A stretch of 64,000 nt of DNA from Octopus sinensis (lineage: Eukaryota), in the NCBI RefSeq assembly GCF_006345805.1, contig NC_043024.1:4278001-4342000 (forward strand). Direction: 5' to 3'. A program made the translations under genes and the position numbers. Below the pieces are notes generated by a model. It was given only the letters and a program-made list of their open reading frames with translations, was not told the origin of the DNA and ran no database searches. This document shows, one piece after another, positions 14,598-25,889 of the stretch. The number at the start of each line of letters is the position of its first letter. The first letter of the stretch is position 1.

Positions 14598-15449
14598 TTT
14601 CACTTTCAATTCTTTTTTTAAAATTTTCACCTGGTCATTTTAAGACAGTTTACTCATATTCTGTTACAAAATACTGGTCCCCAGATACAGGAACCATGCA
14701 AATGATTTTTGGTGTAATTTATAGAGATTTTCGTCTCAAATTGCCCACTGCTGGCCTCAATTTCATTATCTTCACTGTAGAATATGTTATTTCCTAAATC
14801 TATTTCATCATCGTCAACTTCAATGTTGTCACTGTAAGACATACTCTTTTACTTGTTTCAGTCATGTGACTGTGGCCATGCTGGAGCACCGTCTTTAGTC
14901 GAGCAAATCGACCCCGGGACTAATGCTTTGTAAGCCTAGCACTTATTCTATCAGTCTCTTTTGCCGAACCGCTAAGATACATGGACGTAAACACACCAGC
15001 ATCAGTAGTCAAGCGATGTTGGGGGGATAAACACAGACACACAAACACAAACATACATATATACTATATTAAATTAGAGATAAAACCACTATTAGGCAAA
15101 TTAAACAGTGAAAATCATAAACCAATACATCGAAAAAAAATTAATTAATAAAATATATAAAATATAAAATTCAAAATTTAAATTATTAAAAGTTAAAATT
15201 TAAAAGATTATTTAAATTAATAATTTATACTTATAAATTTTTATATATGTATATATATATATATCATTATTATTATTTTTTTTTTTTTATATATATAACT
15301 ATATATATATATATATATACATATATTTCCGTCGACCAAATCCACTCACAAGGCTTTGGTCGGCCTGAGGCTATAGTAGAATACATTTGCCCAAGGTGCC
15401 ACACAATGTGATTGAACCCGGAACTAAGTGGCTGGTAAGCAAGCTACTT

Positions 15450-17242
15450 TATTTCAATTATTTTGCCATAAAGGCATTACACAGAGGGGACATATAACAA
15501 TTAAGAATATGTAAAAATAAAATGATACTGTGAGTGACTTGAAAATGAACGTGAGAAAATAAATTAAGTTTATGATAAAGGGGGTAAAGACCCCCTTCGG
15601 TCATGAATGACCATGGGATTGCACCTAGAAAGTTACCCTCCTAGACACAAGTCCGGGCAAGGTTGTTTATGGAAGACCAGCAGTCGCCCATGCATACCAG
15701 CCTCCCCTCTCCACGCCACCAGTGTTATCCAAGGGAAAGACAAAGGTCGATACAGCTTGGCAGCAGTGACGTCGCTGAGTGAACTGGAGCAACGGGAAAT
15801 AAAGTGTCTTGCTCAAGAACACAACACGCAGCCCGGTCCGGGATTCGAGCTCACAACCTCACGATCGTAAGCTCGACGCTCTAACCACTGAGCCATGCGC
15901 CTTCACATGCATGATATCTGAAAATGAAAATATGAAGAGTGTGCTACTCACCCCACTCTGAGCAACACCACTCGCTGCCTTTGAGTCTGAATTCTTCTCT
16001 AATCTCTGGTCTAGTCCTTCTATTTCCACTCTCACTATCGCTTAATGACAACATTCTTTCGCAACCTTTTTCACCGGGGGAGGGGTTTTCTAAATTCTGT
16101 GGTGTCTGCTCTTTTTTCTTTTTCTTTTTTTCTTGTGGGGAAAGGGAGTGGGTGGGTCTGGTGTCTGTATGGGGCGGGTGGGTCTGAGTGGTCTTGGGTG
16201 GGATGGAGTTGGACTGGGGTACCATATCACACTCGCTGTTCTTTCTTTTCTTCCTTCTACTCTCTGCTACAATCCATTCTTCCTCCTTTCATCTGTCTTT
16301 CTTTTCATCCTCTTTTTTCTCCTTCGTCTCCGCAACTGGTTCATCTGTTTTTTCCTCTATCTTTTTCTTCTGTAGTGGGCAGTGTGCTGTAATGTGGCCT
16401 TTTTGGCCACATTTAAAGCATAGCGGGGTTCTGCCTTCTACCCATACTCTCAATACTATTTCTCCCATCGTCACCGTTTCCGCCAAATTTTCCAGCTCCT
16501 TCGCCTCCGCTTGTATGATCATATCCAGTATTTTTCCTTTGTAGCTTCCTTCCTCTGTCTCTGTGGCTTAGAGGACCGTCACCTCCTCACTTCCAACGAG
16601 GACAGCTGCCGCAACCCAAGCCACTTTTATGTCAGGTGGAATTCCTTCTACCCTCACCTTAGAATTCTTTCTTCCAAGATAGGAGGGTAGAAGTACTAGT
16701 TCCTCAGTTTTTACAGTTGTACTTGCCAGCCTCTTTGCCTCCTCTTCTGTCCTAAACTGGACAACCACCGTCCCATATCTGCTTCCTTTTGCTATATATC
16801 TTCCTTCGAAAGCCCCTTCAGAGCTTTTTCTACTTTTTTCATCTTCATCTGCTCCACCCTCCTACTCTCCACTGAGTGCACCTTGTAGGTAATAGTCTTC
16901 TTTTCCATATTTACCATAACCATTTTCGGGGGTAATAACTTTATATCACTTCCCACCTTCTGTGTCATCATACACAGCTCCTTCAGTTCGGTTAGGTCTA
17001 CTTCCTTTTTCTTTACCTCTGCCGCGTCAGCAAAACTTTTTATTCTTTCCAAATGCTCGTCCATTCTGTTTACCAACTTAACGAGCTCCTCCTCTGATGT
17101 GGATAGTTCATACTCGCTAATGTCTGGATACATTCTTTTCCACTAGTACAACTTTCGCCAACAAACCGCTGGCAAGCAGCTCAAAGGATTCCGTCCGCAT
17201 CGTCAAAACTCAACACAGCAAATAACTCAACGCATGCGCGTT
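15450..17242 (-). mobile_element. ORF1-only non-LTR retroelement (RRM-like region plus CCHC knuckle), inserted in the SINE head
   Basis: Broken ORF from ATG 17133 to about 15944 with CFKCGQKGHITAHC; no RT or endonuclease; target duplication AGTAGCT(C/T)GCT at 17243-17253 and 15438-15448. Confidence 0.8.
15590..15907 (-). mobile_element. Second tRNA-derived SINE family, nested in the 3' UTR of the ORF1-only element
   Basis: Head GTGAAGGCGCATGGCTCAGTGGTTAGAGCG...CTCGAATCCC followed by TGTGTTCTTGAGCAAGACACT. Confidence 0.8.
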
Positions 17243-17279
17243 AGCGAGCTACTAACCACACAGCCACTCCTGTACCTAT

Positions 17280-23452: not shown

Positions 23453-23502
23453 TATCAATGGCAAATTAGTCTATCAAAGAAGTAACGTAACTACTTACAA
23501 AA

Positions 23503-25889
23503 GGCGCAGGAGTGGCTGTGTAGTAAGTAGATTGCTACCCTTCGACGTGTTCAGACGTGTTTTCTTGGCTGCTGCCGGATGTCATGTTCCGGCGTGAATT
23601 ATTGAAATTTGAGACTCGACTACAAGTAAGCGTTTGATGTTTTTTTAGGGGTTTAGTGAGGTTTATTGCTCTGTATTTATTATCTTTTGGAGAGTAATAG
23701 ACTTCACTTTGCTCCGGACATTTTCCTTCCTGTGGTCGAGCGTAAAGACTCACTTTGCAGTGAGAATTGTGGTTTTTGAGGAGGCTTAACCCCTCCTCAA
23801 CAATTAATTAATTTCGTGTTGGATTTACCAAGAAGAACCAAGGATTGTTTTGTTGGATTTACGAAGAAGCACCAAGGATACCCAAGGACTGTTTTGGATG
23901 TTTGGCCAGGAGTACCTTTTTGGCCAAAAAAATTAATTCCTTTGCTGAATTTGAACTCTCTTCTTCCAGCTATCATTTATTTTTAAAAAGAACTCTTTTG
24001 AACTGTTATTTTTAGTGTAATTCTTCTTTTCTGTTGTGTTTTCCCTTCTCCCTCTTTCTAACTTATTTATTTTCTTACACTTTTGAACTTTAATTGGATT
24101 CCATTTCGAAATGGCAAAGGAATTTATTGTGTGGGACCTAACACCTCCCAAAAAACATTTAAAAGAGCTGGAAAAGAAGACCGTGGTGTTGAGGACTTAC
24201 TCGAAGTCGCTCGACACCATAGCTGTCTTCCCGAAGGCCACAATTTTAAACAAGCTGGCGGACTACATGCCAGCCGTTAAATTTATCTCACGGGGAGTGG
24301 TTGCTATTTGACTCCCCACAAGAAGCTTGCGACTTTGCAAGCCAGCCCCTTTAGGGCAAAGAAATATTGTTTCTCCCAAACTATATGGGAGAAAAACTAT
24401 TGAGGGCTTGGATCTGCGGCTTATCACCCGGAGTTGAGCCCGAGTGGATAGAGGACTCTCTCCGCCGGGGTCTGGGTGGTAGCAGTGCCGAGCTGCTAAG
24501 TGTAAAAATGTTGCCTGCGGCTGATTGGGAGGGGTCGAAAGCTGTTTTGACCCTATGGACCCAATCAGCCAAAAGTCTGGTTTTACCAGATTTCTTGAGG
24601 ATGGCCGGGTCCAAGTATCCGGTGATGCTTGAGGGACGCCCCCACCAAGTGTCACCTGTGCCTGGAGACCGGCCACATTAAGAAGAACTGCCCCAGGGAC
24701 CAAAGTAGGAATCTGGAGCAGTTAATGGTGGAATCTCTCCCTGCTCCCCCAATGGAGGGAGAGAGACAGAACGGGGAAATTGCTACATCCTCAAAAAAGA
24801 AAAGAAAGATGGGCAACAATGGTGACCCACCGAAAGACCCGGGAGCTGCGGGAGAAAAAGAGGACCCGTTGTGTGCAACACAGGAACCTCACCCTCCCGT
24901 AGCCCAGGGAAAAAAAGGAAAAAAAAAAAGAAAGACAAACTGGATGCCGGCGGCAGGACACGTAGACGGCGCCTCCCAAGCCTCCTCAGGCGGATGTGCT
25001 GCCGGAGGATCAATATGTGGTCCTCTTCCACAAAGGAGGAACACTTGAAAACGAGATAGGTAAATTGGAAGGGAGAGGCCAATGGGAGGGACTTCGGTCC
25101 TGCACGGAGGACCCTGAGGGGCCTTCGCAGGTGGCTGCAGAGGTCCTATGGCATAGCGATCTGTGCAGGATCATGAATTCCTTCCCGGAGGACTCCTTTC
25201 AGTTTATACCTGAATACTGCCGCCCGACAAAGAATGATTGCCTGGATAAAGCAAAAGCGCTGGTTGGCCGGGTAACTTGAACTTTTTGAATGTTTTTAAA
25301 AAAGAAAATTTGTATCATATTGAGAAAGAGCTTCATTGCCTCTATGTGACTTTTTGATTTTTTTGAAAAAAGAACATTGTCTTGGAGAAGCGGATGTCGG
25401 CAGGCGCTTTCGTCTTCTCCCATCACCATCTTCGTTCCATCACCATCATTCATACCATCAATGTCTACGTCCAGCCCGCAGAGTTACATCTATGTACTGC
25501 CTTCATGGCAAATTTAATGAATAAAAGTAGCTTGCTAACCAACCACATGGTTCCGGGTTCAGTCCCACTGCGTGGCACCTTGGGCAAGTCTCTTCTACTA
25601 TAGCCTCGAGCCGACCAAAACCTTGTGAGTGGATTTGGTAGACGGAAACTGGAAGAAGCCTGTCGTATATATGTATGTATGTGTGTGTTTGTGTGCCTGT
25701 GTTTGTCCCCCTAGCATTGCTTGACAACTGATGCTGGTGTGTTTATATCCCGTCACTTAGCAGTTCGGCAAAAGTGACCTATAGAATAAGTATTGGGCTT
25801 ACAAAGAATAAGTCCCGGGGTCGAGTTGCTCGATTAAAGCTGGTGCTCCGGCATGGCCACAGTCAAATGACTGAAACAAGTAAAAGAGT
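23503..25889 (+). mobile_element. tRNA-derived SINE inserted in degenerate finger 9 of the ZNF array, itself interrupted
   Basis: Head 23503-23537 and remainder 25525-25889; flanks rejoin as ACTACTTACAAAAGG|GTTCATACA (TTYKRVHT). Confidence 0.88.
23538..25524 (+). mobile_element. ORF1-only non-LTR retroelement (RRM-like region plus CCHC knuckle), inserted in the SINE head
   Basis: Frameshifted ORF about 24111-25280 with CHLCLETGHIKKNC; 13-bp target duplication AAGTAG(A/C)TTGCTA at 23525-23537 and 25525-25537; no RT or endonuclease. Confidence 0.82.

What the first reader, a model, noticed from the sequence alone, without database searches (positions are those of the whole stretch)
15438..25537. 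Two divergent ORF1-only retroelements inserted at the same site of the same SINE family: candidate SINE-targeting Tx1/HAL1-like system
Seen in the sequence: element A (15450-17242, minus) and element B (23538-25524, plus) both interrupt the tRNA-derived SINE head immediately after GTGGCTGTGT(G/A)GT(T/A)AGTAG(C/A)T(C/T)GCTA. Both duplicate the target by 12-13 bp (B: AAGTAGATTGCTA/AAGTAGCTTGCTA, exactly 2000 bp apart). Their 3' ends are homologous: TGTAATGCCTTTATGGCAAAATAATTGAAATAA versus TGTACTGCCTTCATGGCAAATTTAATGAATAA. Their ORF1 proteins align only distantly (LLPSYLG/FLPNYMG; VEGRTPLCFKCGQKGHITAHC/LEGRPTKCHLCLETGHIKKNC) and they sit in different SINE copies and orientations, so they are independent insertions. 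Empty targets occur at about 17415-17435, 17555-17575 and 59010-59030. Established knowledge: Tx1-clade LINEs are often sequence-specific for multicopy small-RNA loci, and HAL1 elements are ORF1-only L1 derivatives. Inference: a non-autonomous family pair uses a very abundant SINE as a safe-harbour target and is mobilised in trans by an unseen autonomous partner.
Basis: partly seen in the sequence, partly recalled or inferred. Interest (0 to 1): 0.88.

Follow-up and report, generated by a model that had tools for sequence, protein, structure and literature searches.

The report
ORF1-only retroelements targeting an octopus SINE
Two decayed, distantly related copies of a small octopus retrotransposon that keeps only the first LINE gene sit at exactly the same base of the same abundant SINE. 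This is a real site-specific "parasite inside a parasite" habit of a known general kind (Tx1-like targeted LINEs, HAL1-like half-elements), but with a target not described before.

Summary
Element A (15450-17241, minus) and element B (23538-25524, plus) each split a tRNA-derived SINE between consensus positions 22 and 23. Each is flanked by a 13-bp target duplication of SINE positions 23-35. They share a ~33-nt 3' end. Both carry a frameshifted ORF1 (RNA-binding region plus CCHC knuckle, about 29% identical over the best local match) and no trace of ORF2.

A third, independent B-like copy in Octopus sinensis has the same 5' junction. A relative of A sits, with a 19-bp duplication, in the head of a different tRNA-SINE.

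ORF1 homologues are numerous in octopods (398 cluster representatives). In five fetched loci the ORF1 lies directly upstream of an ORF2 with apurinic-type endonuclease, reverse transcriptase and zf-RVT domains. That ORF2 is most similar to human L1 ORF2p.

All these elements, and a second major octopus SINE, end in the same small hairpin plus AATAAAGAAAT-like tail. The hairpin stem shows compensatory changes.

The SINE target is an 8-bp-arm palindrome. Both nicks fall at 5'-CTT^ACC, once on each strand.

Not shown: the exact autonomous partner, genome-wide specificity, and Tx1 placement by phylogeny. Verdict: a new variant of a known kind, of moderate interest.

The parts
15326..15449 (-). 3' part of the SINE-1 copy split by element A (SINE consensus positions 23-146). 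It includes the 3' copy of the target duplication at 15437-15449.
   Evidence: blastn to the SINE consensus, 91% identity. Exact motif positions.
15450..17241 (-). Element A: ORF1-only non-LTR retroelement made of 5' UTR, decayed ORF1 and 3' UTR.
   Evidence: Sequence, frames, no ORF2 remnant, bounded by 13-bp duplications.
15450..15481 (-). Element A 3' tail: ...TGTAATGCCTTTATGGCAAAATAATTGAAATA(A). It holds the hairpin GCC-TTTAT-GGC followed by an A-rich end.
15583..15913 (-). A third tRNA-derived SINE family nested inside the 3' UTR of element A. This is a later insertion.
   Evidence: blastn finds a second copy in L003 12412-12724, 71% identity.
16289..17133 (-). Element A ORF1 remnants. 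Start ATG at 17133, RNA-binding region, CCHC knuckle CFKCGQKGHITAHC near 16400. One frameshift and in-frame stops.
   Evidence: Pfam zf-CCHC E 0.0023, below the curated cut-off. phmmer finds 398 relatives.
17242..17272 (-). Head of the SINE-1 copy split by A (consensus positions about 5-35). It includes the 5' copy of the duplication at 17242-17254.
17284..17585 (-). Two adjacent uninterrupted SINE-1 copies, giving empty target sites at 17410-17447 and 17547-17584.
23503..23537 (+). Head of the SINE-1 copy split by B (consensus positions about 1-35). It includes the 5' duplication AAGTAGATTGCTA at 23525-23537.
23538..25524 (+). Element B: ORF1-only non-LTR retroelement with a ~570-nt 5' UTR, decayed ORF1 and a ~245-nt 3' UTR.
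24111..25280 (+). Element B ORF1. It needs three frame changes. CCHC knuckle CHLCLETGHIKKNC, plus a C-terminal extension.
   Evidence: 63% identical to O. sinensis LOC115225585, E 1.7e-105.
25493..25524 (+). Element B 3' tail: TGTACTGCCTTCATGGCAAATTTAATGAATAA, with hairpin GCC-TTCAT-GGC.
25525..25673 (+). Remainder of the SINE-1 copy split by B (consensus positions 23-171). The 3' duplication AAGTAGCTTGCTA is at 25525-25537.
   Evidence: blastn 96% identity..
58990..59160 (+). Uninterrupted SINE-1 copy. Its empty target site at 58996-59033 matches the site pattern exactly.

Best explanation
A and B are dead copies of two ORF1-only ('half-LINE') non-autonomous retroelements. They derive from an octopod lineage of L1-superfamily LINEs, most probably what octopus repeat annotations call L1-Tx1. 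Each consists of a 5' UTR, an ORF1 (RNA-binding region plus one CCHC knuckle) and a short 3' UTR. The 3' UTR ends in the lineage's signature: a 3-bp-stem, 5-nt-loop hairpin followed by an AATAAAGAAAT-like A-rich end with no poly(A).

Inferred mechanism. The RNA is copied by target-primed reverse transcription, using ORF2 protein (endonuclease plus reverse transcriptase) supplied in trans by an autonomous relative that recognises this tail. The endonuclease nicks a specific site in the head of the abundant tRNA-derived SINE.

That site is the palindrome GGTAAGTA-GCT-TGCTTACC (SINE positions 20-38). The bottom strand is cut at 5'-CTT^ACC (between positions 22 and 23). The top strand is cut at the mirror-image 5'-CTT^ACC (between positions 35 and 36). 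One sequence preference therefore accounts for both nicks and for the 13-bp duplication.

A and B belong to distant ORF1 branches, yet they share both the tail subtype and the target. This suggests that specificity resides in the shared trans-acting ORF2 partner and not in the elements themselves.

Shown: element anatomy, identical junctions, duplications, absence of ORF2, existence of full-length relatives, the shared and covarying tail.
Inferred: trans-mobilisation, endonuclease specificity, the identity of the partner.
For: - Identical insertion point and 13-bp duplications in A and B.
- The same 5' junction in an independent O. sinensis copy, L001.
- No A-B DNA similarity except the tail, while the flanking SINE halves stay 91-96% identical to consensus.
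- No ORF2 remnant.
- 398 ORF1 relatives, in O. vulgaris, O. sinensis, O. bimaculoides and Argonauta hians.
- ORF1 lies directly upstream of an ORF2 in L002, L003, L004, L006 and L015. Pfam scans of the L002, L003 and L004 ORF2s gave Exo_endo_phos, RVT_1 and zf-RVT.
- That ORF2 is most similar to human L1 ORF2p, E 2e-71, against R2 at E 1e-24.
- The 3' tail is shared by ORF1-only elements, full-length LINEs and SINE-2.
- The hairpin stem is 95% paired in 20 tails against 71% in shuffles (0 of 500 shuffles reach it). It shows G-C to C-G and C-G to G-C exchanges at two of three pairs.
- The target folds as an 8-bp hairpin.
- A fourth ORF1-only copy (L013) sits in the head of another tRNA-SINE with a 19-bp duplication.
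- The ORF1 tree puts A and B on distant branches.
- Tx1-clade LINEs are already known to target other transposons (PMC4494074).
- L1-Tx1 is the only L1-type class listed among recently active O. vulgaris LINEs (PMC13282606).
Against: - Only three copies (two with both junctions) support the SINE-1 site.
- No autonomous element with the A/B tail subtype or a SINE-1 flank was seen in about 200 kb of octopod DNA.
- Other members are not in recognisable SINEs. The L005 ORF1-only element and the L004 LINE are in sequence not repeated in the data held. L003 is in (ATT)n. L002, L014 and L015 are in tandem arrays.
- Nick-site sequences differ between sublineages, so no common endonuclease motif emerges.
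- An A-clade relative (L013) uses a different SINE.
- Endonuclease specificity and trans-complementation are untested.
- RNA 3' end to target pairing is only 2-3 nt, so it does not explain the precision either.
Confidence: 0.7

Rival explanations
1. Hot spot, not dedicated targeting. The partner endonuclease has only a short preference (for example CTT^ACC, or a liking for hairpin DNA). The SINE, present in very many copies, simply supplies most good sites. Many other copies would then lie elsewhere.
For: SINEs make up 11.6% of the O. vulgaris genome (PMC13282606). Related elements sit in non-SINE sequence or in another SINE. No long recognition sequence has been demonstrated.
Against: Three of three copies share the same bond and orientation. 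My estimate for a random hit on that bond is about 1e-4 per insertion. Both nicks fall precisely at the mirror positions of a 19-nt palindrome.
Confidence: 0.2
2. Composite amplification. A single ancient insertion into a SINE created a SINE-head/element/SINE-tail unit. That unit was then copied as a whole, so the shared junction is inherited and not re-created.
For: All three copies have the element in the same orientation as the SINE. B and the L001 element belong to one ORF1 clade.
Against: A and B have no nucleotide similarity outside 33 nt and only about 29% ORF1 identity over the best local match. Yet their SINE flanks are 91-96% identical to the consensus. The duplicated 13-mers differ by one or two bases within each pair, as expected for in-situ decay. 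An A-like element has its own 19-bp duplication in a different SINE.
Confidence: 0.05
3. RNA-level chimera or recombination. Template switching of the reverse transcriptase onto SINE RNA, or ectopic recombination or gene conversion between SINE copies, produced the SINE-element joints.
For: Head-to-tail LINE arrays and odd SINE-2b/SINE-2 joints in the same genomes suggest template jumping occurs in this lineage.
Against: A chimera would put a SINE head upstream. It would not restart the same SINE at position 23 downstream with a 13-bp overlap. Gene conversion cannot place two unrelated elements at one site.
Confidence: 0.03

Closest known systems
Tx1-clade target-specific LINEs (Tx1L in the Tx1D piggyBac element, Tx1-Mar in Mariner-N4_AMi, Tx1-9_AMi in Harbinger, Keno in U2 snRNA genes, Kibi/Koshi in microsatellites; Kojima 2015, PMC4494074)
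   Same: APE-type L1-superfamily LINEs that insert at one sequence inside multicopy DNA, including other transposons. One relative here (L003) sits in a microsatellite. Non-autonomous riders share the 3' tail, as SINEU does with Tx1-Mar.
   Different: The target is the head of a tRNA-derived SINE, which I did not find reported. The elements at the target are ORF1-only derivatives, not the LINE itself. Clade membership was not tested by RT phylogeny.
HAL1 (half-L1) of mammals
   Same: A non-autonomous L1-superfamily derivative that keeps 5' UTR, ORF1 and 3' end and lacks ORF2, presumably using ORF2p in trans (PMC5786205).
   Different: From general knowledge, HAL1 has the mammalian Transposase_22-type ORF1 and a poly(A) end and inserts without site specificity. 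Here ORF1 carries a CCHC knuckle, the tail is a hairpin without poly(A), and insertion is site-specific. The ORF1-only form occurs in at least three ORF1 branches.
HeT-A (Drosophila telomeres) and Ag-Sponge (Anopheles)
   Same: ORF1-only non-autonomous LINEs. From general knowledge, HeT-A combines this with a restricted target, the chromosome ends, and dependence on a partner's RT.
   Different: They belong to the Jockey and CR1 clades. From general knowledge, HeT-A targets chromosome ends through Gag localisation, not an internal DNA sequence with duplications.
Stringent-type LINE/SINE pairs such as UnaL2/UnaSINE1 (from general knowledge)
   Same: A conserved 3'-terminal stem-loop shared by a LINE and its non-autonomous partners is the likely RT recognition signal. 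Here the hairpin covaries and is shared with SINE-2.
   Different: That is an L2-clade system. Recognition here is inferred and not assayed.
R1/R2/TRAS-type sequence-specific LINEs
   Same: Precise nicks on both strands define the junctions and a fixed target-site alteration.
   Different: Their targets are rDNA or telomeric repeats, and they belong to other clades and endonuclease types.

Membership tests
Non-LTR retrotransposon (target-primed reverse transcription) | No terminal repeats, a defined 3' end, and flanking target-site duplications of variable length | tested here: met
   13-bp duplications for A and B. 19 bp for L013, 11 bp for L005, 16 bp for L004.
L1 superfamily (L1/Tx1 group) | ORF2 with an N-terminal apurinic-type endonuclease, an RT and a C-terminal zinc-binding region | tested here: met
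   Tested on full-length relatives only, because A and B have no ORF2. Exo_endo_phos E 1.9e-15, RVT_1 E 8e-31, zf-RVT E 5e-9. Best PDB match is human L1 ORF2p, E 2e-71.
Tx1 clade | RT-domain phylogeny places the element with Tx1 references | not testable with these tools
   No labelled Tx1 reference sequences were obtainable. There is indirect support. L1-Tx1 is the only L1-type class listed among recently active O. vulgaris LINEs, and Tx1 is among the LINE clades an RT-based survey found in bivalves. The nearest non-mollusc ORF2 hits are fish LINEs at 29-32% identity and 337-384 bits, against 244 bits for human L1.
Tx1 clade | Target-sequence preference | tested here: inconclusive
   Three of three A/B-type copies are at one SINE site. 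L013 is in another SINE head and L003 in (ATT)n. But L004 and L005 are in sequence not repeated in the data held. The sample is too small for a genome-wide statement.
ORF1-present bipartite non-autonomous LINE (HAL1 / HeT-A / Ag-Sponge type) | Keeps the 5' part with ORF1 and the 3' tail of an autonomous LINE, and lacks ORF2 | tested here: met
   No ORF2 similarity below E 0.5 in A or B, or below E 0.16 in the L013 and L005 elements. The tail is shared with full-length LINEs. ORF1 is intact in the L013, L005 and L001 copies.
HAL1 proper | Mammalian L1-type ORF1 (Transposase_22), a poly(A) tail and non-specific insertion (features recalled from general knowledge) | tested here: not met
   Pfam gives only weak zf-CCHC hits and no Transposase_22. 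There is no poly(A). Insertion is site-specific.
LINE ORF1 with RNA-binding domain(s) plus CCHC knuckle | CCHC knuckle present, with RRM-like RNA-binding domains upstream of it | tested here: inconclusive
   The CCHC cysteines and a glycine are invariant or nearly so in 16 relatives, but Pfam scores fall below the cut-off. A profile comparison with fish LINE ORF1 carrying RBD_ZCCHC3_1st/2nd plus CCHC is colinear over 141 columns but weak (probability 39.6%, E 3e-4).
Stringent-type 3'-tail sharing between a LINE and its riders | A homologous 3' end with a conserved structure in both autonomous and non-autonomous elements | tested here: met
   20 tails aligned without gaps across the hairpin region. 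95% of cells paired, compensatory changes at 2 of 3 pairs, and 0 of 500 shuffles reach the observed value.
Dedicated SINE-targeting system | An autonomous partner with the same tail subtype and the same SINE target | tested here: inconclusive
   Not present in the window or in the 15 octopod loci held, about 200 kb in all. Whole genomes could not be searched.

The most novel reading that the evidence does not exclude
Octopods may harbour a three-tier parasitism. ORF1-only elements from several deep ORF1 branches plug, through an exchangeable hairpin tail, into the ORF2 of a Tx1-like LINE. That LINE's endonuclease reads the D-arm/anticodon-arm remnant of tRNA-derived SINE heads: a palindrome cut at CTT^ACC on both strands in SINE-1, and in both SINE-1 and SINE-2 a top-strand nick exactly 6 nt after the AGC of the D-stem. 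SINE heads, themselves riders of LINEs, would then serve as a general landing pad. The same LINE lineage also mobilises one of the major octopus SINEs.
Probability: 0.3. Interest if true: 0.7.

Novelty: new variant of a known kind. Interest (0 to 1): 0.55.

Why it matters
Octopus genomes are unusually rich in SINEs, and their transposon biology is only coarsely annotated. A retroelement that lands at one base of a SINE would add a new target class to the list of sequence-specific LINEs. It would give a natural example of an ORF1-only element that is also site-specific. It would also tie a major octopus SINE to its LINE partner through the shared tail.

Practical consequences follow. Such nested insertions confuse repeat libraries and gene models: several octopus 'proteins' in public databases are this ORF1, some fused to host exons. 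A palindromic 19-nt site cut symmetrically by an APE-type endonuclease would also be a tractable case for studying second-strand cleavage.

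Tried and rejected
- Pfam on the two conceptual ORF1s gave only sub-threshold zf-CCHC hits.
- Word-indexed protein searches gave few hits: two O. 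bimaculoides fragments for A and one O. sinensis protein for B. P0001 and P0002 had no contig on record.
- Long phmmer hits were checked for fused RT domains. They are chimeric gene models (C2H2 fingers, Helitron/PIF1, LDL-receptor), not ORF1-ORF2 fusions.
- Logan contigs for P0011 are transcripts without SINE flanks. The P0041 contig is a full-length LINE fragment.
- A metagenome scan for the tail motif returned 34 hits, none with any octopus-like flank, so all are read as chance matches.
- Rfam on 15000-26000 gave no ribozyme or known RNA, only two weak miRNA-model hits in low-complexity DNA.
- ARAGORN does not call the SINE heads as tRNAs.
- A search for SINE-derived peptides inside the collected proteins found nothing.
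- Kojima 2015 has no supplementary files held, so no Tx1 reference sequences could be obtained that way.
- The ZCCHC3/Tx1 literature search was uninformative.
- RNA 3' end to target base-pairing was considered as the source of specificity and rejected. Only 2-3 nt can pair.
- A SINE pol III promoter driving the element was also rejected, because the insertion separates the A box from the B box.

Full report
**What is in the sequence**

The window is octopus DNA: a cluster of C2H2 zinc-finger genes peppered with SINEs. Relatives of its elements come from Octopus and Argonauta.

I call the first tRNA-derived SINE SINE-1. A consensus built by eye from the copies begins GGCGCAGGAGTGGCTGTGTGGTAAGTAGCTTGCTTACCAACCACATGGTTCCGGGTTCAGTCC. 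It occurs six times in the window, and two copies are interrupted.

- Element B occupies 23538-25524 (+). It is flanked by AAGTAGATTGCTA (23525-23537) and AAGTAGCTTGCTA (25525-25537).
- Element A occupies 15450-17241 (-). It is flanked by TAGTAGCTCGCTA and AAGTAGCTTGCTT.

In both, the downstream SINE half restarts at consensus position 23 and the upstream half ends at position 34-37. Three uninterrupted sites in the window match the 38-nt site pattern, against 0.00 expected by chance.

A and B share no nucleotide similarity apart from 48 nt spanning the tail and the duplication (83% identity, E 9e-10). Their ORF1 translations match at 29% over 48 residues, plus the CCHC block.

My estimate for a random insertion hitting one given bond and orientation of this SINE is about 1e-4. 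This assumes the SINE covers about 5% of the genome, which is a guess of mine and not a measurement.

**What the elements are**

Both carry a single decayed reading frame with a CCHC knuckle (Pfam zf-CCHC E 0.002 and 0.02, below the curated cut-off). tblastn with seven ORF2 segments from relatives finds nothing better than E 0.5 in A or B. A also contains a later 331-bp insertion of a third SINE family.

An exhaustive phmmer search with A's ORF1 found 398 cluster representatives at E <= 0.001. The named ones come from O. vulgaris, O. sinensis, O. bimaculoides and Argonauta hians. Several long hits are gene models that fuse this ORF1 to host exons.

Fetching genomic loci for these proteins was decisive. 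In L002 (O. vulgaris), L003 and L015 (O. sinensis), L004 (A. hians) and the Logan contig L006, the ORF1 homologue lies directly upstream of a long ORF2. Pfam scans of the L002, L003 and L004 ORF2s gave Exo_endo_phos, RVT_1 and zf-RVT domains. The best solved-structure match of the L002 ORF2 is human LINE-1 ORF2p (E 2e-71 over 866 residues). R2 proteins score E 1e-24.

So the ORF is the ORF1 of an L1-superfamily LINE lineage, and autonomous relatives exist. Published octopus repeat annotations list L1-Tx1 as the only L1-type class among recently active O. vulgaris LINEs (PMC13282606), and an RT-based survey lists Tx1 among the LINE clades found in bivalves (PMC10294476). I could not place the RT in a phylogeny for lack of labelled references.

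Other ORF1-only copies of 1.6-2 kb, some with intact ORF1, were found in L001, L013 (both O. sinensis) and L005 (O. vulgaris). A rough neighbour-joining tree of ORF1 gives three placements:
- A groups with L013, L014 and P0008, next to the full-length L002/L015 group.
- B and L001 lie on a distant branch near L006.
- L005 lies elsewhere.

The half-element architecture is therefore either old or recurrent.

**The shared tail**

All members end in the same design. This holds for the ORF1-only elements, the full-length LINEs and also a second abundant tRNA-derived SINE (SINE-2). The design is a 3-bp stem and 5-nt loop (GCC-CTTGT-GGC, CCC-CTTGT-GGG, GGC-CTTGT-GCC, GCC-TTYAT-GGC) followed by AATAAAGAAAT-like sequence without poly(A).

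On 20 tails the stem is paired in 95% of cells, against 71% in column shuffles (0 of 500 shuffles reach the observed value). Two of the three pairs show exchanges on both sides. This is the expected signature of a 3' recognition element for the reverse transcriptase, and it makes trans-mobilisation of the ORF1-only elements plausible.

It is shared by two elements whose ORF1s are otherwise far apart.

**Target anatomy**

SINE-1 positions 20-38, GGTAAGTA-GCT-TGCTTACC, form an 8-bp-arm palindrome that folds as a hairpin.

- The 3' junctions put the bottom-strand nick between positions 22 and 23, where the bottom strand reads 5'-CTT^ACC.
- The 5' junctions of B and L001 put the top-strand nick between positions 35 and 36, where the top strand also reads 5'-CTT^ACC. 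A's 5' junction is consistent with this.

The two nicks are mirror images, which explains the constant 13-bp duplication with a single sequence preference. This is inference from three junction sets. The first two bases of each element ((A/C)C) could instead belong to the SINE, which would give 15-16 bp.

The O. sinensis copy L001 (63% aa to B's ORF1; 72% nt over the ORF1 region) has the same 5' junction...GGTAAGTAGCTTGCTT|CC... Its 3' part has been lost to a rearrangement.

The A-clade element in L013 is inserted in the head of SINE-2 with a 19-bp duplication, CAGAAA(C/T)GTTAGCACGCCG.

Four of the five ORF1-only copies with readable flanks thus lie in tRNA-SINE heads. SINEs make up 11.6% of the O. 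vulgaris genome, so the binomial probability is about 8e-4 (my calculation).

By contrast, several relatives are not in recognisable SINEs:
- The L005 element (11-bp duplication) and the Argonauta LINE in L004 (16-bp duplication) lie in sequence that is not repeated in the data held.
- L003 lies in (ATT)n.
- L002, L015 and L014 form head-to-tail arrays.

Target choice clearly varies among sublineages, as it does in the Tx1 clade (PMC4494074).

**Interpretation**

The best explanation is that A and B are dead ORF1-only riders of a Tx1-like LINE. Its ORF2, supplied in trans and recognising the hairpin tail, nicks the SINE-1 palindrome. The target and the tail subtype are shared by A and B while ORF1 is not, which suggests that specificity lies in the partner and not in the riders.

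Rivals:
- A mere hot spot created by a short endonuclease preference plus SINE abundance cannot be excluded with three copies (confidence 0.2).
- Amplification of one composite SINE-element-SINE unit is contradicted by the near-consensus SINE flanks around totally diverged elements, and by L013's separate duplication in another SINE.
- Template-switch chimeras are contradicted by the duplications.

**Comparison and novelty**

Target-specific Tx1 LINEs that land in other transposons are known, in piggyBac, Mariner, Harbinger and LTR elements. ORF1-only non-autonomous LINEs are also known: HAL1, HeT-A and Ag-Sponge (PMC5786205).

I found no report of a LINE or half-LINE that targets a SINE, nor of these octopus families, in four full-text searches. 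Repbase and Dfam could not be consulted. I therefore rate the finding a new variant of a known kind and of moderate interest.

**Limits**

No whole octopus genome could be searched. A metagenome scan for the tail returned only hits without any octopus-like flank. The ORF1 domain assignment beyond the knuckle is weak (hhalign probability 39.6% to fish LINE ORF1 with ZCCHC3-type RNA-binding domains).

Noticed in passing
window 8036-8270 (-); also window 5346-5368 (-), L013 1141-1163, L014 4529-4551 (-); compare L002 3660-3709 and L015 4285-4331: A variant of the second tRNA-derived SINE (SINE-2b) ends in ...TTGTCCCCTCTGTGTTTAGCCCCTTGTGGGTAATAAAGAAAT. Over about 45 nt this is nearly identical to the 3' end of the full-length L1/Tx1-like LINEs. 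Classical SINE-2 tails carry the covarying GGC-CTTGT-GCC hairpin. This points to the LINE partner of a major octopus SINE.
   Followed up: partly
window 7997-8036 (-), window 5320-5345 (-), L013 1164-1200, L014 4490-4528 (-): All four SINE-2b 3' ends are followed by (A/T)GGTA(T/C)TT and then SINE-2-like sequence, once inverted. The matching 5' half of a target is absent upstream. This could be site preference, 3' transduction or template jumping. Unexplained.
   Followed up: partly
L002 (O. vulgaris OX597840.1), L015 (O. sinensis CM016867.1), L014 5640-5700: Full-length LINEs of this lineage occur as head-to-tail tandem arrays. The 3' tail abuts the next 5' end directly. L015 holds three ORF1 copies about 5.3 kb apart.
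   Followed up: partly
L003 3720-3790 and 9345-9385: A full-length O. sinensis LINE of the lineage is embedded in (ATT)n on both sides. Either it has a microsatellite target or it landed in the ATT-rich tail of a SINE-2-type element.
   Followed up: no
window 15583-15913 (-); L003 12412-12724: A third tRNA-derived SINE family (head GGCGCATGGCTCAGTGGTTAGAGCG...) is nested in the 3' UTR of element A, in the same orientation.
   Followed up: partly
window 17226-17241 (-); L001 5488-5505; L004 about 3815-3835: The extreme 5' ends of element A, the L001 element and the Argonauta LINE carry a GCGCATGCG / GTGCATGCG / CTGCATGC palindrome. It resembles an NRF1-type site and could be an internal promoter element.
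   Followed up: no
window 59184-59359: One SINE-1 copy has the target hairpin replaced by GTGCACCGTGGGCAAGCTTGC, an internal duplication of a later SINE segment. It lacks the insertion site.
   Followed up: no
window 9413-10333 (-), 22745-23452, 31443-31982, 37157-38362, 53247-54200, 55729-56379: A cluster of C2H2 zinc-finger ORFs with near-identical N-termini ([19 protein letters not shown]...). The SINE carrying element B starts about 50 bp after the stop of one of them, and zinc-finger-like sequence resumes near 25890.
   Followed up: no
window 311-2301 and 6107-7906: Two other reverse-transcriptase ORF sets, about 25% identical to the L002 ORF2. They belong to different LINE families unrelated to the finding.
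   Followed up: no
proteins P0001, P0007, P0052, P0059 (public octopus gene models): Public gene models fuse this retroelement ORF1 to host domains: a region that by eye resembles an ion-channel ligand-binding domain (P0001), C2H2 fingers, Helitron/PIF1 and LDL-receptor repeats. These are annotation artefacts caused by the family.
   Followed up: partly
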